From: Mytilus californianus
Taxonomy: Eukaryota
Direction: 5' to 3'
Length of the DNA stretch: 64,000 nucleotides
NCBI RefSeq assembly: GCF_021869535.1
Contig: NW_026262712.1
Location: 89,466,001-89,530,000 of the forward strand
This document shows positions 30,483-64,000 of the stretch, piece after piece (position 1 is the first letter of the stretch; every line of letters begins with the position of its first letter). The notes under the pieces are model-generated. The model saw nothing but the letters and a program-made list of their open reading frames with translations. It was not told the origin of the DNA and made no database searches. Position numbers and translations under genes: made by a program.

Positions 30483-32861
30483 ACGACTGTAAACCTATCT
30501 GCATATCAGAAAATATCCTACGTGCACCAAGGAAACGTATATATCAGAAAACTTTTCCATGATTTTTAAAATGCAGCAACTTTTTAACTGCAGTGATAAT
30601 CAGTTTTCACGATCTCACTATACATTGTCAATCTAATATTATTAAACAACAAGACACATGTTGGCTAAACGTAAATGTCAAAGAAACGTGACTAATTCGT
30701 TCAGCTGAATCCTCAATGACATTAATCCCACAAAGACGAAACAAATTGTTCGTATTGAAAGCTAAACGAAGATCAGGGCATTATTTAGATTGAAAACAAA
30801 TTACGCAACTTTCAAGGAACTAATCTATTTAGTCTAACATTTATTGAATATGCAATCAGAATATAACTAGTTCTAAAAATGAAAATAACACCTAGTCTAT
30901 AGTCTTTATAAATGTGGTGCGTCCGGAGCACATTTCTAAGTTTTCCTTTAACAGGAATGCTCAAACCCATTACAACAACAAAAAAACGAAAGCCAAAGAT
31001 ACTTGTATCCCTCTTGAGGAGCTATCTGACCAAAATATAAAAGAAGGTGTGTTCACGCATAGCCAAACCTACTCTTCACAGTTTACTAGATTTTGCAAAT
31101 AAAGTCACATTAAAATGAAATAACACATTGAAACATAGTTTGTATATAAAGACATTTGTTATTAAAACCTGCCTTCCTTAAATTGTCTTTCGATCGATCG
31201 TGAGTTTGTAAGTAACAGCTGAAGCTTCATTTTCACGACATTTATAATGAAGACCATAGTTTATTACACTATTACGCAACGCAACGCAAAAAAAAAAAAA
31301 GAAATCAAAGAAAATTAAATAAAATTTATTTACGGACCCTGTCAATTTTTGTCAATCTCCATTATCAACATAAAACAACCAGTTTTCCTATAAAAATGTC
31401 AACTGAGACATTAATTGCAAAAGAAATGCAACATAATTCAATTGAACTTCAGAAAACTGTTGTCGTGTCAAATGACGTGGACTGCCTGTCGGTTTATTTG
31501 CTCAAGTTTGACACATTATTTTATAATTTTGCAGACGTTCAATTTCTATACAACAATTTGATAGTGAAATAAAAATCGCTAATATAAATTGGAATAAGAA
31601 TTTAAAATCTTGTATATACCTTTCTGCACTGTATTAAAGTTGAAAGTTGAAGGACTTATTGAGCTTGAAAGGCAACGTGATTACGTGTGGTTTGGGTTCG
31701 TTCAATACACAACATGCATTTATATAAATCATTTGGTAAATTTTAATTAATCTACTCCGAAGTTTTATAACTACTCTGTCATGTGCGAAAACAATGTGAA
31801 AATATCTGCAGGCATGTTTGAGTTTAACCTGTTGAAGTTTGAGGATACCATAAAGAAATTAAATGCGAAAAAGGTTAGTTTGAACGTCTATTTTTTTCGC
31901 ATTTATGCTTAGTATATTTCACTTATTTTGCTTGTTGATTGTTTTATATTTTTCCGGGGGTCTAAATTGGTGAATCGAAGTGCCTCAACTTTATTAATTT
32001 TGCTTTCTCATATTGCATGAAACCAGATATATTTACCTTTGAGAGCTCAGTGCTTAGGAGTAGATTTTTCCTATCGCTATAGACAGAATTAATAAATATA
32101 CTTATTAATACGTTTACAACACAATTTTCTTGTACCTGTGCAAATCTGAAAATCAGAATATGGAGAGAAGAGTCGATTGAAATTCCGAGTAAAATAGGAC
32201 CAATATATTTTGAATCCGTGTATGATTATGTGTTTATTTGATTATTTAATTGCCTCCAATGTTGATTTTGTTATCCTTATCGTATAACGTTTACAACTGA
32301 CACCGTTGGCAGGTTGAACATTGATACAATAGATATAAATTCTTAATCAAATATTTGCTCATTTGTATCACTGTTAATTGCTTACATGTACGCAGTTTCA
32401 GGATCCAAACAAACGAACTCTCATATTAGATCATATTTAATTGAAAACTCTGGAGTAAAAATGCCCAAACTGAAGTAGTGTCTGATTTGTGTAAATCAAA
32501 AGAATACATGCAATTCGTTTAAGCGGTAAGTCGAAATTGTAGTATGGTCAATTTCCATTGTATCTATTTCTCTTTCAGGGTCAAAATCAAAATGTTGTTG
32601 AAACTTACGGAGCTCGATTATTAAAGAGACTAAATAATATTATATATGAATTTTTCAATGCTTTTACGTTTCGATCCGTAGGTAACAAGGGATAAACATT
32701 GTTGTGATACGTACGTAACAAGGGATAAACATTGATGTGGACAACTTTGATACAATATTGCAATTGTATGTTTTTGTAAAATTTTGCATCGAAAGACACT
32801 ATTTGCCAAAATAAAATGTAATTAGATATCCTGTTTATATCATGCTTTACCATACAATAGG

Positions 32862-41429: not shown

Positions 41430-43254
41430 AAGAAAATCAAACATCAGAAAACAGAAAGCAATGGAGTTGCACCACTTTGCAGTGAAGGTATAGTACACAC
41501 ACACCCTGTAGACCAAGCAACCATTCTAAACAAGCAATTCCAATCTGCCTTTTCCACCAAGGACACATATAATGAATACGAATTTAAATCCAGATGCAAT
41601 ATGCCAGGCCAATATCCCTCAGCAGAGGAACTCAACATCACAGAAAATGGTATACTCAAACTTCTGACAAAAATAAATCCAAATAAAGCAGCTGGACCAG
41701 ATAATATAAAACCTAAACTACTCAACGAACTGGCCACAGAAATAGCCCCAATCCTTACAATCATTTTCAAAACATCAATAGAAACTGGGGATGTACCACC
41801 TGACTGGAGAAATGCGAACGTAACACCAGTATACAAGAAAGGAGAAAGATATAAAGCAGAAAACTATAGACCAATCTCTCTAACTTGTATTTGCTGCAAA
41901 CTAATAGAGCATATAGTTACAAGCCATATCATGAAACATGCTGATCAACATCAAATCCTCTATCCGTTACAACATGGTTTCCGTAGTAAACGCTCGTGCG
42001 AAACCCAACTAATCGAATTCGTGGATGACATCACTAAAAATATGAGTGCAGGTAAACAGACAGATGTTCTCATAATGGATTTCTCAAAGGCATTTGACAA
42101 AGTCAGTCATAGTCTCCTGGTACACAAACTAGAACATTACGGTATCAGTGGTAAAATCAATAGATGGATTGCCAGCTTCTTATCCCATCGAACGCAAGCA
42201 GTAGTAGTGGATGGAGAGAGCTCATCACATATTGATGTAGAATCTGGAGTTCCTCAAGGCTCTGTACTTGGTCCTGCATTATTCTTGTTTTACATCAACG
42301 ACATGCCAGATGGGGTCAAATCCACTGTCCGCCTATTTGCTGATGACACAATAGCATATCTTACCATCTCATCTGACAAAGACTCAAACGACCTCCAAAA
42401 CGACCTGGACAAACTGGGAACGTGGGAAGTCAAATGGAAAATGCCCTTCCATCCGGACAAATGTAACGTTCTTACCATCAGCCGCAAAAACAACACCATT
42501 CCAACATCGTACACATTGCATGGCCACAAACTTGAACCTGTCAAAAGTGCTAAATACCTTGGTTGCACCTTCACATCTGAACTGAAGTGGAATGATCATA
42601 TCAATAACATATGTAACAAAGCCAATAGGACAATAGGCTTACTTAAGAGAAATCTAAACATAGGAGCAACTTCAGTCAAAGAAAATGCATACAAAAGCCT
42701 CGCAAGACCAGTAATAGAGTATACAAGTCCAGTATGGGACCCATACTTTAAAACCGAAATAGATCGTCTAGAAATGGTCCAGAGACGAGCAGCAAGATAT
42801 GTTTCCAACAAACACCATAACCATTCAAGTGTCAGCAAAATGATTGAGCACCTAGAATGGCCATCTCTGGAAAAAAGGCGAAAAGACGCTAGACTAACTA
42901 TGCTCTATAAAATAGAAAACAACAAAGTGGCCGTAACTAAGGAAGGTCGTCTTATGCAACCAACACGACTGTCGAGGAACATGCACTACAAAAGTTTCCA
43001 AATTCCAGCATCCAGAAGTGATTACAGGAAATACTCATTTTTCCCGAGAACGATCAGGGATTGGAACGCTCTCCCTCCTGGGGTAGCATCAGCATCGTCA
43101 GTCGAGGCCTTTAAAGCCTCTCTGACAAAGCTGAACTAAATTATCAAATTGGGGGGTGGGGGAGGGGGTCTGTATGCGCACCTAAGTCATGGCATAATAA
43201 TCGGCTCGTTGATTGTGGCCATTATCAGGCAGAAGAAGCAGAAGCAGAAGAAAA
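41430..43254 (+). mobile_element. 5'-truncated CR1-group LINE, young insertion
   Basis: Stop-free frame 41430-43139 with the RT domain, then a G-rich 3' UTR with an imperfect hairpin and a (CAGAAG/AAG)n tail to ~43254. No APE endonuclease or ORF1 is present. Possible AAGAAAA duplication at 41430-41436 and 43248-43254. Confidence 0.92.
41601..43139 (+). CDS. Non-LTR reverse transcriptase ORF2 (N-truncated; frame open from 41430, ~570 codons)
   Basis: KAAGPD, ENYRPISLT, QHGFRSKRSC, MDFSKAFDKV, SGVPQGSVLGP, LFADD, KYLG and C-terminal YSFFPRTIRDWNALP. Confidence 0.95.
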   Translation: MPGQYPSAEELNITENGILKLLTKINPNKAAGPDNIKPKLLNELATEIAPILTIIFKTSIETGDVPPDWRNANVTPVYKKGERYKAENYRPISLTCICCKLIEHIVTSHIMKHADQHQILYPLQHGFRSKRSCETQLIEFVDDITKNMSAGKQTDVLIMDFSKAFDKVSHSLLVHKLEHYGISGKINRWIASFLSHRTQAVVVDGESSSHIDVESGVPQGSVLGPALFLFYINDMPDGVKSTVRLFADDTIAYLTISSDKDSNDLQNDLDKLGTWEVKWKMPFHPDKCNVLTISRKNNTIPTSYTLHGHKLEPVKSAKYLGCTFTSELKWNDHINNICNKANRTIGLLKRNLNIGATSVKENAYKSLARPVIEYTSPVWDPYFKTEIDRLEMVQRRAARYVSNKHHNHSSVSKMIEHLEWPSLEKRRKDARLTMLYKIENNKVAVTKEGRLMQPTRLSRNMHYKSFQIPASRSDYRKYSFFPRTIRDWNALPPGVASASSVEAFKASLTKLN

Positions 43255-47334: not shown

Positions 47335-50083
47335 CCATGACTGAATTAAAGTACCTATGCCTTTTTTTTTTGCCTGGATGAAATAGTTTCGTTTATTCGA
47401 TTATGATAAAACTTCTTTTTTTTTCTGTTATATTTTAGAATACGGAGAAGTTTAAACGCAGTCTCTTCAAATCAACAACAAAGAACAGCTCTCTATACTC
47501 ATCCCAAACGTCTCCATCATTAGGGCAGAACGGTTTGGTGAGAGAAACAATGGATTCATATCCACAGACTTATATTTTGCAATTCAGTGCACAAAAATCT
47601 ATTCTTATAATACCAATGATGGAACTGCTTTGATGTCAGTAGTTGAGTTGTAAAATAACACACGATTCTCCGGTACACCGAAATGAAACCGATTGATTCG
47701 AGCCATTTGTTACTTTCACGACTTATTACTGCATTTATAGAGAGAGTCGTTGTAATTGCTACTATAATACTACTTTCAAATTCGTGCATTTTCCAGTACA
47801 TGTTCTATGTCTCAATACTTATGTTATTACGTTACAGTAAGAACCGATGGCTCAACGGCGGCATTTACACCAAATGACCTCGGGTCAACTGGTGTAACCC
47901 ATTTATAAAAAAAAAAAAAACTCGACATTGGTCTATTTTCTATGAAGATCATTAGTTTGTGTAACAATACTCCTCTAGGTGTTAAGTGATGTTAGGTTTT
48001 ATATGTGTAGTTATATTCAATGGTCATGCGCAATGACGTGCGAGAATAAAGGAACTGTCATAGGTAAACATATTCCTTTGATGCAAAAGGTCAAATGTAA
48101 AAGAGAGGCGAAAGATACCAAAGAGACATTCCAACTTATAAGTCGAAAACTAACTGATAACGCCATGACAAAAAAAAACCCAACCCGAACAACAGTATAG
48201 AAAAACACAATATAGAAATTGAAGACTGAGCAACACGACTAAAACCGAAAGCAAGAGCAACACTAACCCCTTTTAAGCAAAACTAGGGATGATTTCTGGT
48301 GCTTAAATTCTCACAAAGACACAAAGAGTTGTTGGAAAAGTTTTGATCTTCATAGAACGTGACGTTCTCCTACATTGTAGTTTTGAACATCGCGTGATAC
48401 ACCCAATTCTAGTCGCACGTGACTTCGTATTTTTCAATAACATCCACTAGGATGCCCCCTCAACTTCGGTCTTACCGTCGGACGGGAGAAGCGAGAGAAG
48501 TCTAAATGACCATCATTATTGGAGCACTCTTGTCAAAAATGGGGTTTCTAATGCAATAGGTTTTCAGTATACATATCTTATGAAAATATTTTAATAGTAG
48601 TAAAATAAATATGTATTATATATTAATTATAGTTACTTGTTTGCTTGGTATATTATAATTGTTTTAAACCGGTATCAAACATATTGTATTACTTTTCAAA
48701 TTAACAGTAATACAGTTTTCTCGAAGGCTATATTTTAAGAAAATATTGTTGCTAAGATGTTATTAAAGTTTTTGAAAATTGAACTTCTCGTTTGGTTGAT
48801 ATTCACTTGAATTGTATTTTGACGTTCTGATATAAGCTCTGCTTTGTTTTGAAAACCCATACATTAAAATTGGAAAATAATGTGGAGTTGTCAATTTTTA
48901 TATACAAATATATATCAAATAAAAGGGGTATTGTCAGCCATCGGAGTAGATAGAACCATCAGTGTCGTTATTTTGTTTTTAGACCAAAGCTTTGAATAAA
49001 AAATTTACCTTTTCTTTTACATTTAACAATCTCATCTACATAACCTTGTGTCTTTTTATGAATTTTATTCTTATGATGTTTTGTGATATTACGTAAATCC
49101 GTCAGTCGATGTTAGATGATACTATTTTTTTAGAATGGTATTATTTCAGTCATGAGATAATATCAGATGGGTAATACAATTTTTTCTGATACTGCATGGC
49201 ATCAATATTGCACTTTTAATACTGTATGTCATAGGTTACAAGCATTGGCGTCATAATTATAAGCCAACCGTCTTGACGTATTACCTAGGGTATACACCAT
49301 TCATGTGCCGTAATAAATAATGCTTTGCTAAATTCCAAATACTTGCAAAGCAAACATCACTGCAAAATTCCCATGAAATACAAAGTACGTGTTTTAAGTT
49401 TTTCAAATTATAATAGAAATTCATGGCGCTGATATAGTATGATTTTGTCCATATACATTTTTTTGTGCTGAATGTTAAGTGGCAAATTAATAACTATTTA
49501 TTGATTGAAGTATAACAAGTTAGTATTAAATGATTATTGTATAATTGATACACAACTAGGATAATATCCTCCAGGCGTGTAATTGCCATGCGAAAAATCT
49601 TGTTAAAATTCCTCACTATTTGTATTTTCACAGTCATTAGCTGAACCAATTTGTTCTCCGAACATTTTAACACGTCCATCTGACATTATTATGTATGTAG
49701 CATTTGTCAACGTGTGTTCTTTAGTGTCAGTAGCATAATTTACATCTTACAAATTGAAACAAACATTGTAAAACATGCATGATGGGAACGGACTATATAA
49801 TAAAAACATGAAAACAAACATCATTTCCGTTCTTAAATCTGTTTTGTATGGGACTCGAACACATACTTTCTATCTCGGGAAGACGGATGCAGCATATAAA
49901 AAAAGTTTTTATTGTGTTTAAAAGTTAACAATGAAGTATGCTTCGTTTATGGCCATTCCAACCAATATGGTTAAAAGACTGTTTCATACCAAAACAGTAC
50001 GTAATCTGAATATACATGCATATAAATTCACATTTTCAGATTTAAATAATTTTTTGACGATATTTACATTTTATTTTGATTAG

Positions 50084-50233
50084 GAAACGATAATGGAAAA
50101 AGAGAGTCTGTCTTCAACAACACATTACACTCGGAAGAAATCGTTCCCTTTTCAACACGAACATGGATTACATGCAGGGATGTATAGTGCTCATGGCTCT
50201 AGAAGACCATCAGTGGCTTACAGGGCCGTTAAA
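50084..50233 (+). CDS. HVCN1-like: Hv exon: N-terminus (ETI)MEKESLSSTTHYTRKKSFPFQHEHGLHAGMYSAHGSRRPSVAYRAVK
   Basis: ttttattttgattag acceptor, ATG at 50093 in strong context, AAA|GTAAGT donor, phase 0 into the next exon. No direct homology support. Confidence 0.75.
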
Positions 50234-52089
50234 GTAAGTATATATTAGTGTAGATATTTAACAGACGACACTATCATAGATAATGATAAACATCACGTGG
50301 TTCGTTTTTTCTCATTTCTTCATAGGTAAAAATTGATTTTGACGTCAATTTTTTGTTTGCCGTCGACTGATTTTGCTATTGTGACGTAATGACTAAAGGT
50401 GACCATGCCTGGTGATATCAAACAAAATGAATTGTTTGCAGAGCATTTTTAACGAATCTCAAAGTTTTCCTGCATATCAGTTTAATCATTATGAAACATA
50501 TTGCGCCACCATATATTTTTGTTCTCTCGAAAGTAAGATTTTAAATATTCAAAACGGTCAACCAGCTTCGCCTTTTGAAAATTGAAAGTAACTGTCTCAA
50601 ATTATACTTAATTTCAGAAAAAAACCTGTGTGTTTTTTAAAATATTTTTGGCAGTTCATCGGTTTAAACCTATTTTTTCTAGGTCATAATTCCCTTTAAA
50701 TGTTTGAATGAGAGAAAAAAAAAGATGTTATAGGACTGATCATTTGCTTAAAATTATGATTTCACGAATCTTTTCCATTTAGTAATGCATAAACTAGATA
50801 ACAAGAATCATAATTAACATTAAACCTATTAACTCTGCAGTTGGTATAGTCTTTTGGAACACCTGTTGTTGTTGAATATTCTTTTGTTAATTAAACAAGC
50901 AATAATCATAATTGTCATAGAGCTGCGTAATTATCAGACTGTACTTCATCATCAGTCATTGACGTATGATGAACAAGGTTCCAGTAATGTTTTAGAAAAA
51001 AATAGCCTTTGTGAATCATCGTTAAACAACACATTAAAATATACTTTTTGAAGTTTTCAATATCTTAACCTTGACTTCGACAATTAGACAACAATATTTC
51101 AAGTGAAAATGGCTTCGTAATTATAATTAGCCAATTAACAAGCTTGTTAAGCATTCCCTGAAAGAAATGGTATGTTGTCCGTTTGTCCATTTGAACCAGA
51201 AGCAAGGTATTAATGTTTTTTTGCACATACAAATATACATAGCATACATTAAGTTGAAGGTAACACCTTTACTTTTATGTAATTCTTTGTAATAATGCCA
51301 ATGTACCCTTGTAATTGGTCTTAAGCTTTATTTAATGTTTTGTTTTCTTTTGCTGAACCTTGAGATCTTAAAGGATTGAAGAAAAGCATTTCCGGTTACG
51401 CTGAATAACTCCACATGTTGTAACAAATATCAGATCATAAAACGCAATAACATTTGAAGTTTTCCTTCTTCTTAGAAAAGGTACATACTCCATTTCAAAA
51501 CAATTTTCCAAACTATCATAGAACTCGTACTTTCGTTTCTCTTGAGAAGTTTTTAAACTGACGTGATTTAATACAAGAAATAAATCAAGCAAATGAAAGT
51601 GGAATATTACGTAATTGTATTCCATCTTCTTTTAAAGTCGAACGCTTGTAAAAGTTGCTCTCAATTTCAACTCTTCTGGTAGAAAACTTCCTCTTAATGT
51701 TACTTGTCTTCTAAATTATGATTTTATATAACAAAAAGGTGCACTTGATTGATATCTTTATGCTTTTGTAGTGTGTTTCGTCTTTTATACTTACATAAAA
51801 CATTTCAAATTATTAATTGATATTGCTGGTACAATTTTCATCAAGCTTTTTGTTATTATCATATTATATAATAAGTTGGAGATACAGAAGTAAATATATA
51901 AGTAACAATTTTCCATGTACAAAAAATACATATTTGTTTTGTGGTGAAAGTGAACTTTCTTTCAATACATTTACATAGACGATATTTGTTTGTTCTTAAT
52001 TTGGACAAATATATTCGAGATAATATGATTTTCATGAAAATATGCTTCATGTGAGTATATTTTAAATTTTCCTAAAGTAATACTGACAC

Positions 52090-52370
52090 ACTGTCCCAAG
52101 TCAGGAGCCTGTAATTCAGTGGTTGTCGTTTGTTTCTATGTATCATATTTGTTTTCGTTCATTATTTTGTACATAAATTATGCCGTTTGTTTTCTCGTTT
52201 GAATTGTTTTACATTTGTCATTTCGGGGCCTTTTATAGCTTACTATGCGGTATGGGTTTTGCTCATTGTTGAAGGTCGTACGGTGACCTATAGTTGTTAA
52301 TTTCTGTGTCATCTGGTCTCTTGTGGAGAGTTGTCTCGCTGGCAATTATGCCACATCTTCTTATTTTTAT
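52090..52370. mobile_element. Family A copy (near complete) in Hv intron
   Basis: GTCCCAAGTCAGGAGCCTGTAATTCAGTGGTTGTCG...GGAGAGTTGTCTCGCTGGCAATTATGCCACATCTTCTT. Confidence 0.85.
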
Positions 52371-53037
52371 ATGTACATACAATCATTTCCGATATCCACA
52401 TGTTTTTGTTGTTGTTTCTTTTCTCCTTATTTTTTTATTTTTGTAGTTAATTACATTCTTGTGAGTTTACAAACTTTGTTTACCGTAGCAACTTCCTTAA
52501 CGATTTTTCCTTTTCCGTTTATTTTTTGCTTGATTAAGCTTATATTGTCTCAAGAAATAATTGTCATCACTTGAAATCAGATGTCCGTCCGTCCGTCAGT
52601 CATTATTTTTTTTCTCGTTGAAATAAGAATAAAGGACCCGTGTGGTCAACGTTTCCGTACACAAAATTTTATGAAGAACACATCAGTTTAGATAAATCTT
52701 CTCATTCGTTTGATAAAAACAACTAGAATAAAGTTTGTTTTAAAAAGAAATTAACAACTTTAGCAGAACGGAATGAGGTAAACTGGTCTGCCCCATTTTA
52801 TTTTGAATGATATATGTGTATGATAATTATGCACAATACATGCGCAGTGGACGGAAGAGGAAAGGGACAGGGACTATTCTGGAAATGTATCATTATGGGC
52901 ATTTTGTGTTAATTGCAAATCTCTGGTTTTCTCTGTTAAATAGTATTGACATCATATTTTAGATTTGACCTCTAGAGTTACTTTTGTGTCATTGGGATGT
53001 TGTCGGATTGACATATCTCAACTTTTATAGTATATAT

Positions 53038-53285
53038 TTTATTTGCCCCCTACCGGCGAAGTTGAAGGGGACTGTAAGTTTGCATGCCGTCTGTCCTTTA
53101 ATCCGTCTTTATTTTTTTTTCAAATGTTGGACAAGGAAATTTCTCGATATTATCATTTTCGACAGTTTTTCTGTTACGCCTGAAACAATTGATTAGTTTT
53201 TTAGTATATAGTCATGCCAAAGAGCGTACAGAATAAATTTTAGTTTCTAACGGGTAGAACGATCTTTGCGGAAGTTGTGACCCAT
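53038..53285 (+). mobile_element. Truncated HINE-like element (5' part)
   Basis: CCCCT-accggcgaagttga-AGGGG hairpin followed by a degenerate CGTC/CTGTC microsatellite. An isolated (CGTC)n is also at ~52583-52602. Confidence 0.45.
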
Positions 53286-53349
53286 GAAATAAAAATATCC
53301 TTTTCTGTACTCAATCCGTAAGCCTGAAAAATTCTTTCCCGATTTGAAT

Positions 53350-53530
53350 GAGGGTCCGGTGCCCAGTGGTCCAAGTAGTTCATCCATCTGCAATGGTCAC
53401 ACGACTGTCAACTCTAAGGTTTTTGAATTCGAACCCGGCTCATGGCGAGATTTGTTCGACTCCAATCTTAACTGACAAGAATTGATTGCATAATTTCTTG
53501 CCAAAGATCGCGGTGGTAGTACTTTATGCT
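53350..53530 (+). mobile_element. Decayed tRNA-derived SINE (5' part)
   Basis: A-box-like GGTGCCCAGTGGTCCAAG and B-box-like GAATTCGAACCC, followed by CTCGACTCCAATCTTAACTGAC. No cloverleaf. Confidence 0.55.
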
Positions 53531-53628
53531 CCATGTCATATATTTACCGTAGACAAAATACTTAAAACAAAAATTGTGTAATATATTTTATCATCATTAG
53601 AACTGTAGTGATATTAATGTGTTTACAG

Positions 53629-53747
53629 GCTGTGGAAAATGTCGCTAGACGAATGTCCACACCTGATTTCTCAATTGAAAGAATTGAGCAAAACTTAGAG
53701 GAAGAACTTGAGAGAGAATCAAAAGAACCAGAAAAACTTGGAGACAT
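53629..53747 (+). CDS. HVCN1-like: Hv exon: AVENVARRMSTPDFSIERIEQNLEEELERESKEPEKLGD(I)
   Basis: tttacag acceptor, AT|GTAAGA donor, purine-rich coding composition. Phase 2 matches the S1 exon. Confidence 0.85.
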
Positions 53748-55418
53748 GTAAGATTACATATCTATATCAAGAACTGTCAGAGTATATTTATAATAGAAAA
53801 AGAAACCCCTTTCTGTGGTCATTGGAATTATATTTACTAAGACGAAAAAATATTTCAATAACATGACAATGTAGTTACATATACAAAACACAGATGTCGA
53901 ATTCAGGATAGAACAGAAATTTAAACCATATAAACTCGTACTTATTTGCGTGTATTTACTTTTTATACTTATTTTTTTCCTTTTTTATATTTCTGCTTAC
54001 TTATTCTTCTAATAAATGAAGTTTTGGCAGTCAATATAACACTATGACACTGACAGCAGCAATTACAGGCGAGAAACAGGGTTCCACGGAACCCTTTACA
54101 AATTTTGTTTATGATATAAACGTATTTATCGTACCGATTTTAGTGCGCCAAAAAGATAAACATTGAAAATTTTTACTTTTTAAATTGATATCGCGCACAA
54201 TTTGTGTGTAATAAGCGTATGCATGATCTTAAAATCCTCTGCCAATATATTAATGGACATTTTGCATTAAAAAGATGCGTTCTCCCAGTTTGATGTGAAT
54301 CCATTGCCAATATATTTCATGATCATACTTGTATGAATTGATTGCACAAGTAAAGTAAAAATGGACTCTTATGTAATGTTATTTTTTCTATTTAAAAAGC
54401 CAAATGGATAAAAAAAATATCCTATTATCTAATTTACCAAATGTAAATTAAGCCAAAAAAGTGCTTCGCACACTTTAAATTAGTCTAGTTATACTTCGAT
54501 TTTGCTTCTATAGAAATATAACTGTTTCCTTTCTCAAGGTTGTAGACTAACAGCTAATAGACATATCTATTATATCCATATGATGCTGCATATTCCTTTT
54601 ATATGTATATGACTGCAAAGAAAATTTAATGGTACAAATGTTTATTTTACTTTTAAAAATTGTAAAAGGCATTAATCATTTTGTCTGAAATAATCAATTT
54701 CCATTCTATAACAAAATAAACAAGGAAAAACACTTAAACAATTTTACACTAAAATTACAGATTACACAGATTTTAATTGAATCAAATTTTAAATATGGAA
54801 TAAAGGAATTTCTTATACCAAAGAACATGGAAATTAAAAATACAATAAAAGTTTTGTTGTTCCCTCCAGGTCTGTTCGATTTTAAAGCTCTCCAAACTTT
54901 TTTTATTATTTGATATTCTAAACGCTTTGTCTCGAATGCACATGATAAAAGTTATTTTAGGAACACGTGTTTTTTTCACGGACATCAGTATCACGCTTTT
55001 TTCTTCAGTTTTTCAGATATATTTTTATAACGATAATAAAACTTAACATGCGATGAATTAAAACGGCAATAACCAAACTGCTTAACTAAATCTTGCATGT
55101 ATATAATTTGCATGTCTTTCGTGCAAAACTTTCATAGAGGTTGAAATTATGACCTGAATCGTAGTAAGAAATACAATAGACATGTATAGTCTGTAGAAGA
55201 AAAAAAGGAGTATACCGAATTTGTAAAACAAAACGAATAAGGAAAAAGTGACATTAAAATACGAAGTAAGTTTAAGACAACACAAATAATATGCCTCATT
55301 TCTAAAGTAACAGAAAACAAAATCAAGTCTGAATGATTTAATAAAGAAACAACTTAGCGTCTCGTATGACTGATTAAAAAACATAATTTTTTAACACTAC
55401 AAACTTTTCTTGTTACAG

Positions 55419-55543
55419 TTTACGAAGGTCTGGTGAGAAACTCCTACATAGTAAAAAAGTTCTGTTTTTGATCGTGCTTTTAAACATCATCGATTGTGGA
55501 TTGGTTCTTGGTGAATTAATTTTAGATATACACTTTATAAAAG
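55419..55543 (+). CDS. HVCN1-like: Hv exon, S0-S1: LRRSGEKLLHSKKVLFLIVLLNIIDCGLVLGELILDIHFIK(D)
   Basis: D112, V116, E119 and D123 equivalents are conserved. cttttcttgttacag acceptor, non-canonical AAG|GCAAGT donor. Confidence 0.92.
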
Positions 55544-57041
55544 GCAAGTATTAGATAATGTAACATCTAACATACCTTATAAATCTGAAAACTGAATAAC
55601 GTTGGATATAAAAGGATTGCCTTCAAATTTTCAAAAATAACTAGTTCAGGGTATTAATTCTTCGACACATGTCATGTATTAAACATGTATTCATTGTAAC
55701 ATATAAATATGGAGAACACCAATTCAAATGTGTTTCTTAGATATGAAACAGTTTACTGAAGGTTACGAGAATTTCGGGGTAAACATAAATCTTATTTTAT
55801 CAATAAAATGTAGTATTACTGATGTAACGTAAACCACAATTCAATTAGAAGGAAGGCCATGCATTGTCTTTAATTAAGAATTAATTCGTTTATGTTATTG
55901 ATATTGTATTGAAAGTGTCTTTAGTATCAAAGTTTAGCAATCAATCAAAAGCGTTTTGATTTTATGCATATTTGTACAATTGTTGGATATTGTTAGGAAT
56001 ATAGAATCTTCAATATCCAATTCCACCAAGTTTCGTTAACTTTTGGTTTTTAACCCCATAGTGAAACAATTTATGTGCAATTGCTCACAACTCTTTTTTG
56101 TGTGTGTATTTTTTGCATAAGGTAATGTCCAATTGAATGTACAGTTGAATTACTACTTAAAACTCATTATATACCTGCATGGAATGTATACATTCCTTGC
56201 GCCGTAGACTGATAGGTAAAACTTGTTCTGTAATAAAGTTCAAGACATTTGCAAGCAATTGTAAGCAAACTAAATATTTTCGAAAATATATTAAGGTAAA
56301 GATCAACGTTCTAAAAGTGCAGTTATTAAATATCACCAGGGGGTTAAGGAAATAATTTGAAATGTTGATAATATTTCACAGATAATTTGCAATGCAGCAA
56401 TAGAATTATAATATATCATGATTATTCGTTAGATGATTATATTCGCAGTACAGTGTCGGAATTATTAGATTAATTTGTTATATATGAAATTGTCCGACGT
56501 TTTGTATGGAGGGTATCGTGGAAGAGTGTTCTGCAGAGAAGGCATCTTTGAAAAAATATTACCAAAAATATTTTTCGTGGTATTTATGTTTAGTACCAAT
56601 TTCACGAAAGAGATAAACGATCCGTTCACAATCATTACTAAAACAATTTTTCATGGCACCTAGTATAGTGAATAGTACCATTTTCACTATGAAACCCGAT
56701 TCATTCCTTATCTATTTTGCTCTCTATGTATTTAATCAGAGAAAGGTCATTATATTTACAAGACCTTGACCACAGTAAGCACGATGTGAAGAACAAATTA
56801 TCGAACGTATCACTGAAAATTGGCTAAATTGCTTTATTAATATATATTATTGGTAAATATGGACGGATGGTTGTCTAAAGATTGATGATTATACCTTCCT
56901 TAATCAATGTGATTGATTATACCCTCTTTAGGAAGATTATCTTTCATTGACGTTTCTAAGTCTAATCATCATCTTCTTTATTTTACGACTAAGTATGCTC
57001 AGGTGCTACAACAGTTATATGTATATTTACAAAAACATTTG

Positions 57042-58102
57042 TTTTAAGCTCACATAGTCTGAAAGGCCAGTGTGAGCTTTTGCCATCACTTGGCGTCCGT
57101 CGTCTGTGGTCAGTTAACTTTTACAAAGATCATCTCCTCTGAAACTACTAGGCTACATTTAACCTAACTTGGCCATAATCATCAATGAAGTGTCTAGTTT
57201 TAAAAATGTGTACAATGACCCTGCCTGTCGACAAACATGGTCGACATGGCTAAAAATAGAACATATGGGTAAAATGCATTTTTTTTCTATTTCCTTGAAA
57301 ACCGCTATGGATAAAGAAAATCTGACGAGGCAAAAGTGTTCAGAATGGTATGATCTACCTTCTGTATATTGACATCAAAATTGCCAGACGACTTCTATCG
57401 GAGTAATTGCCGTTAAACGACGAATTTCACCATTCATTTTTTTTTCTTGCGTATTATTTTGTAAATCTTAATAGATATACTGAAACTTTAATTAGCAAAA
57501 ATAATCAGCAAGACAAGACCTACAAATGAATCAAACGACTAAAATCGTCGGTCAACACCTTGTCGAAGTTATAATTGCCCTTTAAAGACGATGTTCCCCA
57601 ATGTTTTACATTTTAGCTTTTATCTTGAAAACTATAATAGACATGCAGAAACTTTGAAAAGCAAAAATGATCTACAAGTAAGTTAAACAACCGAAATGTT
57701 TAGTTGACTTCTCATTGAAGTTATTGCCCTTTAATGACATTTTTTTTGCATTTTTGACTATAGATAGATAGAAACTTTAAAAAGGAAAATATTCAGCTTG
57801 ACAAGATCTAAATAATAAGTCAACATGACGAAATCGTTAGTTGTCTCCTTATTAGAGTTGTTACCCTTTCATAATAATGTTTATCATTTTTTTGCCTTTA
57901 ATCTTGAAAACTATAATAGATAAATAGAAACTTTAAAAGGAAAAATGATCAGTCAGGATAAGATCTACAAAAATGTCAAAATTACTGAAATAGTCAGTTT
58001 ACTCTTAATATAGTTATTCCCCTTTAATGATGATTTTCATTAAAAAGTGGCCATTGTTGAAGATGTAGGTGAGCGTAATATGCTCTTTAGAGCCTCTAGT
58101 TT
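57042..58102 (+). mobile_element. Complete HINE-like Helentron derivative with ~4.5 internal ~140-165-bp repeats
   Basis: 5' TTTT-AGCTCAC...GTGAGCT hairpin and CGTC microsatellite. Units start G(A)GT(T/A)ATTGCCC at ~57401, 57570, 57719, 57856 and 58012. 3' GGTGAGCG, then hairpin GCTCT-TT-AGAGC and CTAG-TTT. Confidence 0.85.
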
Positions 58103-59125
58103 GCAAATGTAATACACGCAAATTTGCCAGAAAATTGCCTTAGTCATATATCTGCTCGGAAAAAATGGCCGGCTATTTCTGTCCTTGGTATAGGCCCTGG
58201 TATCATCCCTCGAACGTATGAACCCTAGGCTTGCTTCTTGTGCTGATATGGGAATCTTGGGATGGCAGCAGGGCCGACATGGAAAAGGACATGTTACGAT
58301 CTATTTATCATGTATAAAGCTAATGCTTTAAAAAGTTATCCATATATTCGAAAATATAGGAAGGAAGGTGGATGATGCAGGTTTCCTTTGACCCCTCAGA
58401 AGTGCGGAAAAATATTTCAGACTTTGAAATAATGAAATAATGATGAATAGAATGAAACAGATACGAGTAGCAATTTTGGTGCATACGTGCCTTATTTTGT
58501 TGAATGAAAAAAGCCCAAAGTGGATTAAGTTTTAATAAGTGTGAACAGGGGTAATTGTTTGGGTTTACTTTCTCTGAGCAGATTTCATAGCATGAACAAG
58601 GCATAGTGTAATTCTGTGATTAATACATATGCTAAACCCAATGTTTACACTACAAATATTTGATAAAAGTTGTTCATTTCCATACAAATATAAGTTGTCT
58701 GTGAAAAGTAAGCGAAAACAATTCAGACAGTGTATCTTTATTTATCTTCTAGGAAGTTTATTAGAAAAGCCATCTAAAGCTTAACTAGTGTTCAAAAGCA
58801 TTATAACAATTGCCAATGCAAGTAAATAATAAGATGTAACGACCTATTCATATACAACTCTTCTTCCATTGGGACGTCAAATAAGACGGTAAAGGACATT
58901 ATTTAGAACTAATATATTTTCTTTTGTTCCTATAATTAAATGTACCCATTATGATTTTGTTATTAAAGAGTTTCTGATTAAAAGCATTTCACGTCATTTT
59001 TACTATTTTATTTTTCTGACAGGTTTAAATAGAATAGTGTTTCATATATAAGAATGTATGCATTTCGGATATCACATAATTTAATTAACTTCTTGAAATA
59101 TAAACTTCCTGTTTTACAATTTCAG

Positions 59126-59433
59126 ATATGGTAAACGACTCAAAAGTTTTAATCAAAAAGTTCATGGTTATCTTACGGACCGAGTTTGCTGCAATATTTG
59201 GATTAATAGACACATTAGATGTACCTGCATATTTCAACACAGTCATAAATACAATTTCACATCCTTCAAAATATAATCGGACGTTATCAAACAAATCTAG
59301 TGATCATTTTCAACAATTTACACATCAAGATATGCCAACTTTTTTGGATACAACAGTTACAACAATAGAAGAAGATATAGCTCATGCATTTCATAAAGCT
59401 AGTATAGCAATATTAGGTTTCCTTGTTTTAATG
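59126..59433 (+). CDS. HVCN1-like: Hv exon: long S1-S2 loop and S2 (...EEDIAHAFHKASIAILGFLVLM)
   Basis: tttcag acceptor in phase 1, ATG|GTAAGC donor. FHxxSIxIL matches Hv1 FHYMSITIL. Confidence 0.92.
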
Positions 59434-59469
59434 GTAAGCATATTACAATGTGCGAATTTTGGAGCATAA

Positions 59470-59575
59470 CAAGTAAGAACGTTGCTGAGATCACTGCCCA
59501 AAAATACATATGTACGAAACGCGCGTATGGGGTTATAAAGTATAAACCTGGTATATTTGATGAGTTTTTCATACC
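59470..59575. repeat. Interspersed repeat (GACGAAACGCGCGTCTGGCG type)
   Basis: GTACGAAACGCGCGTATGGGG...CCTGGTAT.TTTGATGAGTT. A second copy is at ~60340-60455. Confidence 0.65.
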
Positions 59576-61510
59576 TACATAGCAATGTAAAATTACCAAA
59601 CTGTGGCTTAGTAAAAGTAATAAAACAAAAGTTATCGAAAGTATCTTACTGATCAATATATTTTTAGCCACTTAAAAAAAAATCCAAACCACAAATCCCA
59701 GCACATTGCTGGGTCTTGATCCACATCAATTCACTTGAACCTCTAGCTAATAATAAAAATATGACAATGCGCGTTAACATGGACGTAAGATTGATAAATC
59801 TTCAAATATCCTAAAAAAAAGTCATATATCATATATTTTTGTATGTATGAGCAATAAGCAACACGACAATTGTAACAAAAGAGCAGAACCGGAACACAAT
59901 TCCAAAGCAACTGAAATTACCCTTGTTTTGGTTTTTGGATTATGTTACTCAGTATGTAGTGTTTTGAAGACTGTAGTGTGCCTTTTTTGTTCTATTTTTA
60001 TTTTTGCCCATTGTAAATGATTTTATTCATTGACTTATGGTTTTTTGTCCCCTTTGTACTAACTTGAGAAACTTTTACATGCACATATTATTGTCATTTT
60101 TTAACAACAGACAAAAATGAGAGATGAATTATTGCATTTTTAATGAATGCTGCATACATATAATGTTATCAAAATCGAAATTGTGATTATTTAGTATTCC
60201 GAATTCTATTACAATGCAGTTTTCTCAGTAATTAAAACCTCAAAAATTTTTAATTTACATTTAAATCTAGTAACATAATTTTCAACTGTCTTTGGCAAAA
60301 CCTTTCGGAATAATGGCTCCTCTATGATTTGCAATGTAACACTTTATTTGGCCGTTTAACTTTTTTGATTCGAGCGTCTTTGATGAGTATATTCTAGGCG
60401 AAAAGCGCGTCTGGTGTACAAAATATGAGCCTAGTATCATTGATGAGTTGTTTAAGGTATATAATGTCCACATTCATTGTAGATATAATCCTTGAATACA
60501 AATAATTTAGTCGAGCAAACTACCGAAATCACCATGATTTGCATTCAAACATCTTTTGGTATAGCTAATTTCATATAAGCCTACAATGTGACAGACAAAG
60601 GATATCAATATCATGATATGTCTTCTTTTTTGACAGACATTGATCTCTTTCATCAACCTTTCTGGTTTCAACAAATATTATACTGATGTACAAACATTAA
60701 AAGTAAACGAAGACTTATTTATTACAACGGGAAACCGCCTGGCGAAATAAGATAACACTAATCAATATTTTAAATCTGTAATAACGAAATAGAAATGTTA
60801 CTTAATTGACAGTATTGTTTTATTAAACGAGTTCCATTCAGTATGCATGAACAATCTTCAATGCTACTTTTTAAAATTATTAATATCTTCGAAAAATGAT
60901 AAGAGCTGAACGTTGAACTTTGTGTTTTTTTTTCACAACTAATTTTCCTAAAGGTTTTGGTGAAAACAATTATTTCTGAATGTATCGAATGCAAGTAAGC
61001 ATCGGTATTTGATTAGATATGAATGAAAAAGATAGACGAAATATACCAAAAGGATATTCAAACTCTTAAGTCGAAAACAAATTGACAATGCCATGGCAAA
61101 AAACGAAAAACGACGAAAAGACCAACAACAGTACACAAAACACAACATAAAAAACTGAAGACAGAGCAGCTGTTACTGGTATTTATACTAAGGAGTGTGC
61201 GACAGGAGCATAAAAGGCCACTGCTGGATTGAAACGAAAGATCCTTGGTCCTCTAGCATGCATAACCATACAGATCATATTAAAGTTGCAGTGCCCATCT
61301 AAAACTAAAATAGATATTTTTTCCAAATTATGCGATAATCTTACTCATCCAAGTTGTTGGGAAAAGTAGATATGTAATTTGTATGATATTTTATGTTCGG
61401 AGAAATAGCAAAAAACACAAAGTTTGATAGAAACTAAAATTCCGTGCTGTCGATATTTTTATGTTTGGATTGATGTAAAAATAATTTCTTTATTTTCTTT
61501 ATTTTTACAG

Positions 61511-61564
61511 ACTATTTTAAAAGTATTTTGTTACGGAAAAGAAATATTCAAGAAAAAACTTCAG
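61511..61564 (+). CDS. HVCN1-like: Hv exon, S2 end and S2-S3 linker: TILKVFCYGKEIFKKKLQ
   Basis: Long polypyrimidine tract ending tttttacag, CAG|GTAAAC donor. K157, E164 and K169 equivalents are in register. Confidence 0.92.
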
Positions 61565-61999
61565 GTAAACTTTGTGAATCTAAAATGCAAGAAATATTCA
61601 AGTAAAACAAGGTACTGTGTATATATATCTCGAAATAAAGAAAACAATTTGATATACATTGTAAACTTTGAAAAGTGTTTTGTCATAAGCCGCAGTCATA
61701 TTATTTTATTTTGAAATTTCAACAAATCATCTGAAAAATCTAATAATGAAACAAGTTTAGAAATATTCGTGCCTCCAAAATGTGACGGATTGTTAATCCT
61801 ATTTGAGCCTGATTTTCATACTTATGAGTCATTTGTGATACATGAAGCTATCTACGTTTTAGGGGGAGGTCTCAGACTTAATTTGGCTATGGATTTGCAT
61901 ATTGGGTGATTTATAACAGGAAATCCTACCTTGTCGACGTACAACGTCCTACTTCTTTTGTAGTTCTTGTGAATCCCTAAGTTTCAAGTTTCAAAGAGC

Positions 62000-62450
62000 C
62001 AGTATAAGCTATTGCTAGCAATTCGGGACCATCGTCTGTCCGCCGTCATCGCCAATCATTTGTTTACTTTTACAAATATCTTCTTCTCTGAAACTACAAG
62101 GCCAAATAAAAACAATAGGGCATAGGGGCCAAATATTTTATCATTTATTATCTTGTTAACCATTCTAGATAGAGACAATATGACAAGGGAAGAAATGTTC
62201 AGAATGACGAGATCTACGCACCAGTCATATTGACCAAAACTGTCAGACGACTCCTCATACGAGTGATTGTCCTTAAATAATTTATTTTAACCATTTTTGT
62301 TTTTGCCCTTTTATCTTGAAATCTATAAAAGATATAGAGAAACTCTAAAAGAAAAATTATCTGCAAGACCATTTCTATAAATAAGCTAAATGACAGAATA
62401 TCGTCAGCGACTCAACATCGATAAAGTACTGTTGCCTAAATTATATAAAC
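62000..62450 (+). mobile_element. Truncated sibling of the 57042 HINE
   Basis: CATCGTCTGTCCGCCGTC...TTTACAAA.ATC.TC.(T/C)CTCTGAAACTAC.AGGC and TTTTATCTTGAAA.CTATAA units are shared with 57100-57960. Confidence 0.75.
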
Positions 62451-62653
62451 ATTTTTATATTCTGTATAACATAGTCTCTTAAATGCTATGTGAATACTTG
62501 ACCGTGTAAAACAACATTGTATGTATAATAGCTATATATCATTAATAACAGCTCTAAGTATTGCCTTGCACTAACGGACGAAATCATCAGGATTGGTAAA
62601 CCGTATCTATGGGTAATGCAGTATAATGATTTATAAATTAAATCTCATTTCAG

Positions 62654-62792
62654 CTATTTGATGGTGTAATTGTGATTATATCCTTCGTCCTAGATCTTGC
62701 CTTTATAAAAGGTATGATGGAATATCCACTAGAAGATGCAGTTGAAATCCTAGCATTCCTTATACCATGGAGAGTAATAAGAGTTGCCAACA
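62654..62792 (+). CDS. HVCN1-like: Hv exon, S3-S4: LFDGVIVIISFVLDLAFIKGMMEYPLEDAVEILAFLIPWRVIRVAN(S)
   Basis: D174, S181, F182, D185, W207, R208, R211 and N214 equivalents. tcatttcag acceptor, A|GTAAGT donor. Confidence 0.95.
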
Positions 62793-64000
62793 GTAAGTCA
62801 CATTATACAGAGAATTCCAAACGAACTCTCTAAATGTAAATTGTAATTTGGTTCTGAATTAAAGTTAATGGAACTTAATTTAAATATACTAACAGGAAAT
62901 GTCAGGAAGAAATAATAAATTGAAAAGAAAATTACTTTTAAATCACCAATACTTGATTTATGTTATCTAATTAACAAAGAAAAGATGTCAAAAAAAAAGA
63001 TAGAGATCACTGATAAAACAAAATAGAATAACAGAAAAAAAACTGTTGTGGTAATTTGGACAAATATGCAAAAAGCATGATTTTTTTGTAAAACAATTAT
63101 GAAATCCTGGAAAACAGCACTTTCAATGTATTTTTTTGCTAACAAATCATATTTTTAAAACTTCTAACACTCGTCGTCAATCTATTATATAAATGTTGTA
63201 TTTACATCAATTTAATGCACTAACGTTCAAATCTGTTCTCTTGGAAATCATTTTGAAAGTACTCATTACAATGTGGATAAAACAGTTACAATTTGAAGTA
63301 TTTCTTCATATTAAAATGTTTTAATCTAATAAATATGAAATTAACAGATTAAGCACATACTATCTCAAAGAGAGAAGTCTTACTTAAAACATGAGTTATT
63401 GAGAACACAATTGTTTTTTCATACAAAAAGATTTCCAAAGTGGTTTGAACAGTTTCCTCATAATTTATTGAACTTTAGATGTGTATGGCCTCTCAGTAAG
63501 TGTTTTTGTCATGTACCTTAAGAATTAAATTGCCTTCGCGATTATTGGACACGTATGATGAGTTGATTGGTCAAGAAGTCAGTCATATTGCAACAATCTG
63601 GATACCAAAAGTCAATATACAAGTATAAAAGATATAGAAAGTGGTTCCATCAACTTCTTCGTTTAGTTTTTGATAAGCATTTGACTCAAAAAAAACTAAA
63701 ATGATTAGTAAAAAGGAGAAAACAAATTGATCTACTTATGTTAAATCAACGATTTTACTTTGCCTGTTAATAGGAGCGTGATAATCTTTATAGTAATGAT
63801 CAGTAATAGTCTTTGTAATGAATTGCTATAAATTTGACATTGAAATCATTAAATATGTATACGTTCTTGGATAATAGTTGGCTTTAGGGTTCCAGATGAA
63901 GGTAATTCCGGAAAACGCGTTGGACGCACCAACTTTCTAAAGAATTACGACATAACAGGGCGTGCAGTTTATTAACTGATTGAACTTCAAATAAATAAAT

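What the first reader, a model, noticed from the sequence alone, without database searches (positions are those of the whole stretch)
50084..62792. Atypical voltage-gated proton channel hidden in short exons
Seen: only two of the six exons fall inside listed ORFs, yet they assemble with consistent phases into an S1-S4 domain with Asp in mid-S1 and WRxxRxxN in S4. Established: D112 in S1 with W207/R208/R211 defines Hv channels, and molluscs have an expanded Hv family (Hv1-Hv4). Inference: this is a bivalve Hv3-type paralogue with several concerted changes (next findings) that predict non-standard gating. It is a candidate for acid-base control in calcification, haemocytes or sperm. This is the most interesting system in the window.
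Basis: partly seen in the sequence, partly recalled or inferred. Interest (0 to 1): 0.85.

Follow-up and report, generated by a model that had tools for sequence, protein, structure and literature searches.

The report
Mussel Hv3-type proton channel gene
The six short exons are real and form the membrane core of a California mussel gene from the already described molluscan "Hv3" group of unusual voltage-gated proton channels, so this is a correct reading of a known kind of gene and not a new system.

Summary
Observation confirmed. The six + strand exons (50084-62792) splice in phase through five GT-AG introns and one GC-AG intron. Their 295-aa product occurs letter for letter as residues 35-329 of Mytilus californianus "uncharacterized protein LOC127704771" (498 aa). 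The window is identical to that assembly.

The gene is larger than the finding. One coding exon lies at 31781-31873, and three more lie beyond the window end.

The protein is an Hv3-type ("unconventional") proton channel as defined by Chaves et al. (2022/2023):
- Asp in mid-S1.
- An insert of about 80 residues in the S1-S2 loop.
- S4 motif IPWRVIRVAN (xPWRxxR, no first Arg).
- No pore or phosphatase domain.

AcHv3 from Aplysia, the only member tested functionally, is among its relatives. PDB sequence matches favour Hv1 over Ci-VSP by 8-17 orders of magnitude.

Four changes are shared by most or all members: V109N, F150L, loss of R1 and Pro at 206. Loss of E153 marks one clade of mussels, scallops and oysters. 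E171Q is found in Mytilus among its close relatives.

dN/dS against M. edulis is 0.12, so the gene is constrained. RNA support is thin. No current has been measured.

Verdict: a new member of a known kind, of moderate interest.

The parts
31781..31873 (+). Coding exon 1 of the RefSeq model (MCENNVK...NAKK, 31 aa). It has an ATG start and a GT donor, and lies 18 kb upstream of the finding.
   Evidence: tblastn of P0131. The sequence and its translation match P0131 residues 1-31.
47442..47537 (+). Counterpart of the first coding exon used in the M. edulis and M. coruscus models (MEKFK...GQNGL). Here the start codon reads ACG, so in this genome it can serve only as an untranslated or alternative 5' exon.
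   Evidence: tblastn of P0001 and P0133. Sequence: acceptor ...ttttag, ACG GAG AAG, donor GTGAGA.
50084..50233 (+). It holds an in-frame ATG at 50093.
53629..53747 (+). Coding exon 3: cytoplasmic N-terminus (AVENVARRMSTPDF...). It is conserved across bivalve orthologues.
55419..55543 (+). Coding exon 4: the S1 helix, with Asp146 (= D112 of human Hv1), Asn143 (= V109), Glu153 (= E119) and Asp157 (= D123). It ends at a GC donor (AG|GCAAGT).
   Evidence: The GC donor is conserved in M. edulis, and the paralogue has GT at the same place. The M. coruscus model uses a GT donor 33 nt upstream and loses GELILDIHFIK, which all homologues keep.
59126..59433 (+). Coding exon 5: the large extracellular S1-S2 loop (87 aa, three NxS/T sites) and the first half of S2, including His252 (= H140) and Leu262 (= F150).
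   Evidence: Transcriptome-like contigs cover this exon alone and stop at its borders.
61511..61564 (+). Coding exon 6 (18 aa): the second half of S2 and the S2-S3 linker. Met265 (= E153) is the last codon of exon 5. Gln283 (= E171) is the last codon of this exon.
62654..62792 (+). Coding exon 7: S3 (Asp286 = D174, Asp297 = D185) and S4 (I320-P321-W322-R323-V-I-R326-V-A-N329). It ends in phase 1. The C-terminal helix and acidic tail are encoded beyond the window.
   Evidence: The downstream exons were located in L001.

Best explanation
This stretch holds coding exons 2-7 of a 10-coding-exon gene, Mytilus californianus LOC127704771. The gene encodes a 498-aa member of the molluscan Hv3 ("unconventional") subfamily of voltage-gated proton channels.

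**Shown**
- The exons splice in frame.
- The protein is a four-helix voltage-sensor domain with no pore or enzyme domain.
- It has the Hv selectivity Asp in S1.
- Its S4 reads IPWRVIRVAN, with the first gating Arg replaced and a Pro before the Trp.
- It carries an insert of about 80 residues in the S1-S2 loop.
- S4 runs on as one long predicted helix into the C-terminus, followed by an acidic, disordered tail.
- It is under purifying selection.

**Inferred (about 60% likely)**
- By analogy with Aplysia AcHv3, it conducts protons selectively through the voltage-sensor domain itself.
- Its voltage dependence is very shallow, and there is a standing H+ leak, because only two gating charges remain and the Pro distorts S4.
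- The hydrophobic gasket is weakened in most of the family (V109N in 43 of 52 members, F150L in all 52).
- This pteriomorph clade has also lost the inner counter-charge E153 (Met here). In human and Ciona Hv1, neutralising E153 shifts opening by -55 to -100 mV. The channel should therefore be open at still more negative voltages.
- The acidic clusters and the basic KKRSKK stretch in the tail suggest that it works on internal membranes. This last point is weak.
For: **Gene model**
- Splice sites and phases.
- Exact identity of the model to P0131 residues 35-329.
- Window identical to GCA_021869535.1 JAKFGE010000006.1 over 42 kb.
- GC donor conserved in M. edulis, with a GT donor at the same position in the paralogue.

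**Family**
- 114 hits to the S4 exon, nearly all xPWRxxRxxN, AcHv3 among them.
- 52-member alignment with invariant D157, H252, D286, D297, P321, W322, R323, R326 and N329.
- Table of key positions.
- PDB sequence search: Hv1 1.4e-11 and 1.5e-10 against Ci-VSP 1.4e-3. With a family profile, 2.6e-19 against 0.03.
- No Pfam phosphatase or pore domain.
- AlphaFold model with pLDDT 85-95 over S1-S4.
- Structural matches to voltage-sensor domains: Ci-VSP Z 14.3, Nav and Cav Z 12-13, Hv1 chimera Z 7.8.
- The gene sits in a 12-row clade of mussels, scallops and oysters (SH-aLRT 99).

**Constraint**
- dN/dS against M. edulis: 0.12 overall, 0.04-0.05 in the membrane helices, 0.32 in the loop.

**Literature**
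- Definition of Hv3 and the AcHv3 currents: PMC10377628, PMC10911540.
- Hydrophobic-gasket double mutants leak protons when closed: PMC6754559.
- E153A/C shifts threshold by -55 to -101 mV, and E164A/E171A by -7 mV: PMC4969798.
Against: - No current has been recorded from any bivalve Hv3, so function rests on one gastropod relative in a different clade (about 27-33% identity overall).
- The loss of R1 together with E153, and E171 in Mytilus, could abolish gating or conduction altogether.
- Single V109T, V109A and F150A mutants do not leak in human Hv1, and F150L is conservative. A "broken gasket" is therefore not established.
- RNA support here is thin. Sampled raw RNA reads of organism A gave zero depth on exons 4 and 5. 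Only two short contigs from runs whose type is guessed cover exon 5.
- P0131 has no Pfam match.
- Foldseek E-values for the full-length model were weak, the best being 0.21.
- No tree with classical Hv1/2/4, TMEM266 or VSP could be built.
- The organelle localisation is inferred from sequence composition only.
Confidence: 0.82

Rival explanations
1. The protein is a voltage-sensor protein that descends from Hv channels but no longer conducts protons. It would act like TMEM266, as a sensor, a regulatory subunit or a partner of another Hv paralogue.
For: - R1 is missing, there is a Pro in S4, E153 is Met and E171 is Gln.
- The review notes that some molluscan Hv duplicates may no longer be proton channels (PMC10377628).
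- TMEM266, the closest relative of Hv1, carries no H+ current (PMC6392501).
Against: - The selectivity Asp, D185, D174, W207, R2, R3 and N214 are all kept, and they are invariant or nearly so in 52 relatives.
- The membrane helices are under strong purifying selection (dN/dS 0.04-0.05).
- AcHv3, with the same S4 motif, conducts protons.
Confidence: 0.13
2. The protein is the voltage-sensor part of a voltage-sensing phosphatase or of a pore-forming voltage-gated channel, and its other domains were missed.
For: The best structural match of the model is the Ci-VSP voltage-sensor domain (Z 14.3), followed by Nav and Cav domains.
Against: - The complete 498-aa RefSeq product has no Pfam phosphatase, PTEN-C2 or pore domain.
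- The C-terminus is a long helix followed by an acidic disordered tail.
- Sequence matches favour Hv1 by 8-17 orders of magnitude.
- No further gene was called within 10 kb downstream.
Confidence: 0.02
3. The stretch is a decaying duplicate (pseudogene) or a gene-prediction artefact that is not expressed.
For: Sampled raw RNA reads gave no depth on exons 4 and 5. The start codon of the exon at 47442 reads ACG.
Against: - The reading frame is open over all ten coding exons.
- dN/dS is 0.12, against a dS of 0.22.
- There is one orthologue per species in mussels, scallops and oysters.
- Contigs from transcriptome-sized runs stop exactly at the borders of exon 5, and the flanking introns have zero depth.
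Confidence: 0.03

Closest known systems
AcHv3 of Aplysia californica (XP_005094274; Chaves et al. 2022/2023, FEBS J, PMC10911540)
   Same: - Asp in S1.
- S4 of the form xPWRVIRVxN, without R1 and with a Pro before the Trp.
- F150L and R162G.
- A large S1-S2 loop.
- S4 continues into a C-terminal helix.
- 10 exons.
- 57% identity over the S3-S4 exon.
   Different: - AcHv3 is 980 aa, with a 299-aa loop and a 535-aa C-terminus. The mussel protein is 498 aa, with an 87-aa loop and a 170-aa C-terminus.
- AcHv3 keeps E153 and E171 and has Thr at V109. The mussel protein has Met, Gln and Asn at those positions.
- The two lie in different clades of the family tree.
- Only AcHv3 has been recorded electrically.
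Classical Hv1 (human HVCN1, PDB 5OQK; mouse chimera 3WKV)
   Same: - A four-helix voltage-sensor domain without a pore domain.
- D112, E119, D123, H140, K157, D174, S181, D185, W207, R208, R211 and N214 are all conserved.
- It is the best sequence match in the PDB.
   Different: - R205 is Ile, L206 is Pro, V109 is Asn, F150 is Leu, E153 is Met, E171 is Gln and H193 is Tyr.
- There is an insert of about 80 residues between S1 and S2.
CgHv4 and the AcHv1/AcHv2 "conventional" molluscan Hv channels (PMC10377628)
   Same: The same superfamily, in the same animals. All have Asp in S1 and Trp in S4.
   Different: Those are 200-250 aa, with a full RxWRxx(R/K) motif and short loops. None reached E <= 0.001 with the S4 exon as query.
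TMEM266 (HVRP1) and Ci-VSP
   Same: Both have an S1-S4 voltage-sensor fold. TMEM266 also has a coiled coil after S4. Ci-VSP is the best structural match.
   Different: - Ci-VSP matches only at E about 1e-3 by sequence and carries a phosphatase domain that is absent here.
- TMEM266 does not conduct protons. Its sequence could not be compared here.

Membership tests
Voltage-gated proton channels (Hv), criteria of Chaves et al. (PMC10911540, Database analysis) | Four transmembrane segments S1-S4, with no pore domain | tested here: met
   - Hydropathy peaks.
- AlphaFold helices at 133-160, 241-278, 281-303 and 309 onward, with pLDDT 85-95.
- Voltage-sensor-domain matches at Z 12-14.
- No Pfam pore or enzyme domain in the 498-aa product.
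Voltage-gated proton channels (Hv) | An acidic selectivity-filter residue (D/E) in mid-S1, equivalent to D112 | tested here: met
   Asp146 aligns with D112 of 5OQK and 3WKV. The position is D in 51 of 52 relatives and E in one.
Voltage-gated proton channels (Hv) | A conserved Trp in S4 with at least two basic residues around it | tested here: met
   W322, R323 and R326 align with W207, R208 and R211. All three are invariant in 52 relatives.
Voltage-gated proton channels (Hv) | The full classical signature RxWRxxR (three gating charges) | tested here: not met
   The R205 position is Ile and L206 is Pro (IPWRVIR). This excludes the conventional Hv1/2/4 groups. It does not exclude the Hv3 group.
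Voltage-gated proton channels (Hv) | A C-terminal coiled coil directly after S4 | tested here: inconclusive
   AlphaFold predicts one unbroken helix from 309 to 380. No coiled-coil predictor or dimer model was run.
Voltage-gated proton channels (Hv) | A proton-selective, Zn2+-sensitive conductance | not testable with these tools
   This needs patch clamp. Of the two Zn2+-binding histidines, H140 is kept and H193 is Tyr.
Hv3 ("unconventional") subfamily, PMC10377628 section 2.1.4 | S4 motif xPWRxxR: R1 lost and a Pro before the Trp | tested here: met
   The motif here is FLIPWRVIRVAN, identical to that of the scallop orthologue. Pro is present in 52 of 52 aligned members.
Hv3 ("unconventional") subfamily | [quoted passage not shown] | tested here: met
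   The loop is 87 aa with three NxS/T sites. There are about 80 extra residues relative to human Hv1. The distance from the S1 Asp to the S4 Trp is 176 residues, against 95 in human Hv1 and 168-384 across the family.
Hv3 ("unconventional") subfamily | Enlarged intracellular N- and/or C-terminal domains | tested here: met
   About 130 aa lie before S1 and 169 aa after N329. This is modest compared with the 535-aa C-terminus of AcHv3.
Hv3 ("unconventional") subfamily | Groups with AcHv3 and not with Hv1/2/4 in a rooted tree | not tested
   AcHv3 is among the hits, and the family tree places the gene in a bivalve clade. No conventional Hv sequences could be fetched as an outgroup.
Voltage-sensing phosphatase (VSP) | A PTEN-like phosphatase domain after the voltage sensor | tested here: not met
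   No Pfam match in P0131. The C-terminus is a helix followed by an acidic, disordered tail.

The most novel reading that the evidence does not exclude
The mussel, scallop and oyster clade of Hv3 channels has kept the proton-selectivity Asp but has only two S4 arginines. It has also lost the inner counter-charge E153, and Mytilus has lost E171 as well. This clade may be an essentially voltage-independent, constitutively open proton leak: a natural "always-on" Hv. It would work on internal or secretory membranes of shell-forming or other tissues, and the conserved helical S1-S2 loop might serve as an extracellular or luminal regulatory module.
Probability: 0.2. Interest if true: 0.6.

Novelty: new member of a known kind. 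Interest (0 to 1): 0.35.

Why it matters
Hv channels are the smallest voltage-gated channels, and the way they couple voltage, pH and proton conduction is still debated. Molluscs are the only animals known to hold many Hv paralogues, and only one Hv3 member (Aplysia AcHv3) has been recorded.

This mussel gene is a compact natural variant of 498 aa. It combines three things:
- the Hv3 S4, with no R1 and a Pro before the Trp;
- the gasket changes seen across the family;
- a clade-specific loss of the E153 counter-charge.

It is therefore a convenient test case for which residues cause leak and which cause shallow gating. It is also a candidate proton pathway in a calcifying animal.

Two practical points for annotation also follow:
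- The M. coruscus "HVCN1" model truncates S1 because it avoids a conserved GC-AG intron.
- RefSeq labels these genes "uncharacterized".

Tried and rejected
- **Pfam on single exons and on the whole protein**. P0131 gave no family. Only AcHv3 reaches Ion_trans.
- **Foldseek of the full-length model against the PDB**. There were no matches at E <= 0.001. The VIA second look was needed to see the voltage-sensor fold.
- **Three word-indexed homologue searches** (P0006, P0131 and a 13-sequence profile of the voltage-sensor domain). They returned only Hv3-type proteins.
- **Reads**. The 6000-base limit forced a choice, and I took exons 4-5 (55400-61399). Raw RNA reads gave no depth on the exons, so the GC-donor junction was not seen directly. 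Most laid reads belong to repeats in the introns. The junctions of exons 5-6 and 6-7 were not tested with reads.
- **A search for exon 8 inside 62793-64000**. Nothing was found. Exon 8 lies at about 64424, outside the window.
- **Tandem paralogues in the window.** I considered and rejected these: tblastn with all family members hits only this gene.
- **Literature search for a later paper on the bivalve Hv3 family**. None was found in the library. The review cites a manuscript in preparation.
Full report
**1. The observation**

I listed the stop-free stretches on the + strand and read the splice sites directly. The six exons are:

| Exon (window coordinates) | Content |
|---|---|
| 50084-50233 | cytoplasmic N-terminus, in-frame ATG at 50093 |
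| 53629-53747 | cytoplasmic N-terminus |
| 55419-55543 | S1 |
| 59126-59433 | S1-S2 loop and first half of S2 |
| 61511-61564 | second half of S2 |
| 62654-62792 | S3 and S4 |

- Each exon has a pyrimidine-rich AG acceptor. Five donors are GT.
- The donor of the S1 exon is GC, in the classic AG|GCAAGT context.
- The exon-end phases (0, 2, 1, 0, 0, 1) fit together. Translation from ATG 50093 runs open for 295 aa.

**2. What the gene is**

- I searched the 46-aa S3-S4 exon against 1.84 billion representative proteins. It gave 114 hits at E <= 0.001.
- The best hit was M. coruscus "HVCN1" (P0001, 100% identity over the exon). Aplysia AcHv3 was also found (P0029, XP_005094274, 980 aa).
- About 99 of the hits carry xPWRxxRxxN in S4.
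- A follow-up search found M. californianus "uncharacterized protein LOC127704771" (P0131, 498 aa). My 295-aa model occurs in it letter for letter, at residues 35-329.
- The genomic locus of P0131 (GCA_021869535.1, JAKFGE010000006.1) is identical to the window over the 42 kb they share.

The full gene has ten coding exons:
- Exon 1 is at 31781-31873.
- Three C-terminal exons lie at about 64424, 66393 and 67083 in window-equivalent coordinates, beyond the window end.

The first coding exon of the M. edulis and M. coruscus models corresponds to window 47442-47537. Here its start codon reads ACG.

**3. The GC-AG intron**

- The M. coruscus model uses a GT donor 33 nt upstream and so lacks GELILDIHFIK, the outer half of S1.
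- All other homologues keep that motif: scallop, oyster, Aplysia and human Hv1.
- M. edulis has the same GC donor. The M. californianus paralogue has a GT donor at exactly this position and phase.
- The GC donor is therefore the real one, and the M. coruscus model is most likely wrong at this point.

**4. RNA evidence is thin**

- I laid four runs on 55400-61399.
- Raw RNA reads gave no depth on the exons.
- Two contigs come from small runs of transcriptome size whose type is only guessed. They cover exon 5 without any differences.
  - One lies on 59155-59433. It stops exactly at the donor and has 52 further letters that are not on the stretch.
  - The other starts at 59124. Its first two letters fit the ...AG end of the GC-donor exon.
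- The introns on both sides have zero depth.
- This fits splicing at both borders of exon 5. It does not show the junctions themselves.
- Most laid reads belong to repeats in the introns.

**5. Family membership**

Sequence alignment. HMMER aligns the protein to human Hv1 (5OQK) and to the mouse chimera (3WKV).

| Conserved (human Hv1 numbering) | Changed |
|---|---|
| D112, E119, D123, H140, K157, D174, S181, D185, W207, R208, R211, N214 | V109N, F150L, E153M, E171Q, R205I, L206P, H193Y |

There is also an insert of about 80 residues between S1 and S2.

PDB ranking by sequence:

| Query | Hv1 | Ci-VSP |
|---|---|---|
| P0131 alone | 1.4e-11, 1.5e-10 | 1.4e-3 |
| Family profile | 2.6e-19 | 0.03 |

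Structure:
- The AlphaFold model has pLDDT 85-95 over the four helices.
- S1 extends outward to residue 182, and a short loop helix follows at 192-207.
- S4 runs as one helix to residue 380.
- VIA alignment gives Z 14.3 to the Ci-VSP voltage-sensor domain, 12-13 to Nav and Cav voltage-sensor domains, and 7.8 to the Hv1 chimera.
- The fold alone therefore says "voltage sensor". The sequence says "Hv".
- No phosphatase or pore domain is present.

These features match the published definition of the unconventional Hv3 group: a very large S1-S2 loop, larger intracellular parts and xPWRxxR, with up to eight members per bivalve species (PMC10377628).

**6. Family traits versus traits of this gene**

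In an alignment of 52 full-length members:

| Change | Distribution |
|---|---|
| F150L | 52 of 52 |
| R205 replaced by a hydrophobic residue | 52 of 52 |
| L206P | 52 of 52 |
| R162G | 50 of 50 |
| V109N | 43 of 52 (Cys or Thr in the rest) |
| E153 lost (M, L, I and others) | 18 of 52, kept in 34; all 12 aligned members of this gene's clade lack it, 6 others do too |
| E171Q | the two aligned Mytilus orthologues and two distant members |

A maximum-likelihood tree of the membrane core places the gene in a 12-row clade of mussels, scallops, oysters and pearl oysters (SH-aLRT 99). That clade has about one orthologue per species. It is separate from the AcHv3 clade and from a second M. californianus paralogue (LOC127706656), which lies 1.9 Mb away on the same chromosome.

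**7. Constraint**

| Region | dN/dS against M. edulis |
|---|---|
| Overall (dS 0.22) | 0.12 |
| S1 and S2-S4 | 0.04-0.05 |
| N-terminus | 0.04 |
| S1-S2 loop | 0.32 |
| C-terminus | 0.12 |

The gene is functional. Its membrane helices are tightly conserved.

**8. How it most likely works**

- AcHv3 is proton selective. It shows a standing H+ leak and about 60 mV per e-fold voltage dependence, against 4-6 mV for AcHv1 and AcHv2. Its authors attribute this to LPWRxxR and possibly to a breached hydrophobic gasket (PMC10911540).
- In human Hv1, single V109T, V109A and F150A mutants do not leak, but the V109A/F150A double mutant does (PMC6754559).
- E153A or E153C shifts the threshold by -55 to -101 mV. 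E164A/E171A shifts it by only -7 mV (PMC4969798).
- From this I infer that the mussel channel conducts protons with shallow gating and is biased further toward the open state than AcHv3. E171Q probably matters little.
- The acidic clusters and the KKRSKK stretch in the tail hint at internal membranes. That is conjecture.

**9. Verdict**

- The reading from raw sequence was accurate, down to the exon borders.
- The thing found is a member of a family described in 2022-2023, and it is already present in RefSeq as an unnamed prediction.
- What I did not find in the literature searched:
  - the clade-wide loss of E153;
  - E171Q in Mytilus;
  - the conserved GC-AG intron that misleads one published gene model.
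- The roles in calcification, haemocytes or sperm remain untested. One M. edulis larval study reports only that unspecified "voltage-gated hydrogen channel" contigs change during development (PMC6662379).

Noticed in passing
window 41601-43139 (+): A 512-aa open reading frame with a reverse-transcriptase domain (Pfam RVT_1, E 6.5e-36). It is a non-LTR retrotransposon remnant that sits in the 18-kb first intron of the channel gene, in the same orientation. It explains the GC-rich bin at 42-44 kb.
   Followed up: partly
window 57000-58100 and 61000-61170: Intron segments that attract very many RNA reads and contigs at 90-95% likeness in all four runs, with many joints and loose ends. They look like dispersed, transcribed repeats, not part of this gene's mRNA.
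   Followed up: no
window 55510-55543, compared with P0001 (M. coruscus CAC5376356.1): The deposited M. coruscus "HVCN1" protein lacks 11 residues of S1 (GELILDIHFIK). Its model takes a GT donor 33 nt upstream of the conserved GC donor, which is probably an annotation error.
   Followed up: yes
window 47442-47537 (+): This exon is homologous to the first coding exon of the M. edulis and M. coruscus models, but it reads ACG where they have ATG. The M. californianus RefSeq model starts instead in an unrelated exon at 31781. Usage of the 5' exon, or the start codon, therefore differs between Mytilus species.
   Followed up: partly
L003 (JAKFGE010000006.1, 87.53-87.57 Mb, opposite strand): A second Hv3-type gene of M. 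californianus (LOC127706656, P0054, 479 aa). It keeps E153 and has a GT donor after S1. It lies about 1.9 Mb from this gene on the same chromosome and belongs to a different clade.
   Followed up: partly
window 10605-11024 (+): A 139-aa ORF built from a repeated unit of about 10 aa (GQKFTVKY / GQYFTVKY). It is probably a translated tandem DNA repeat and not a gene.
   Followed up: no
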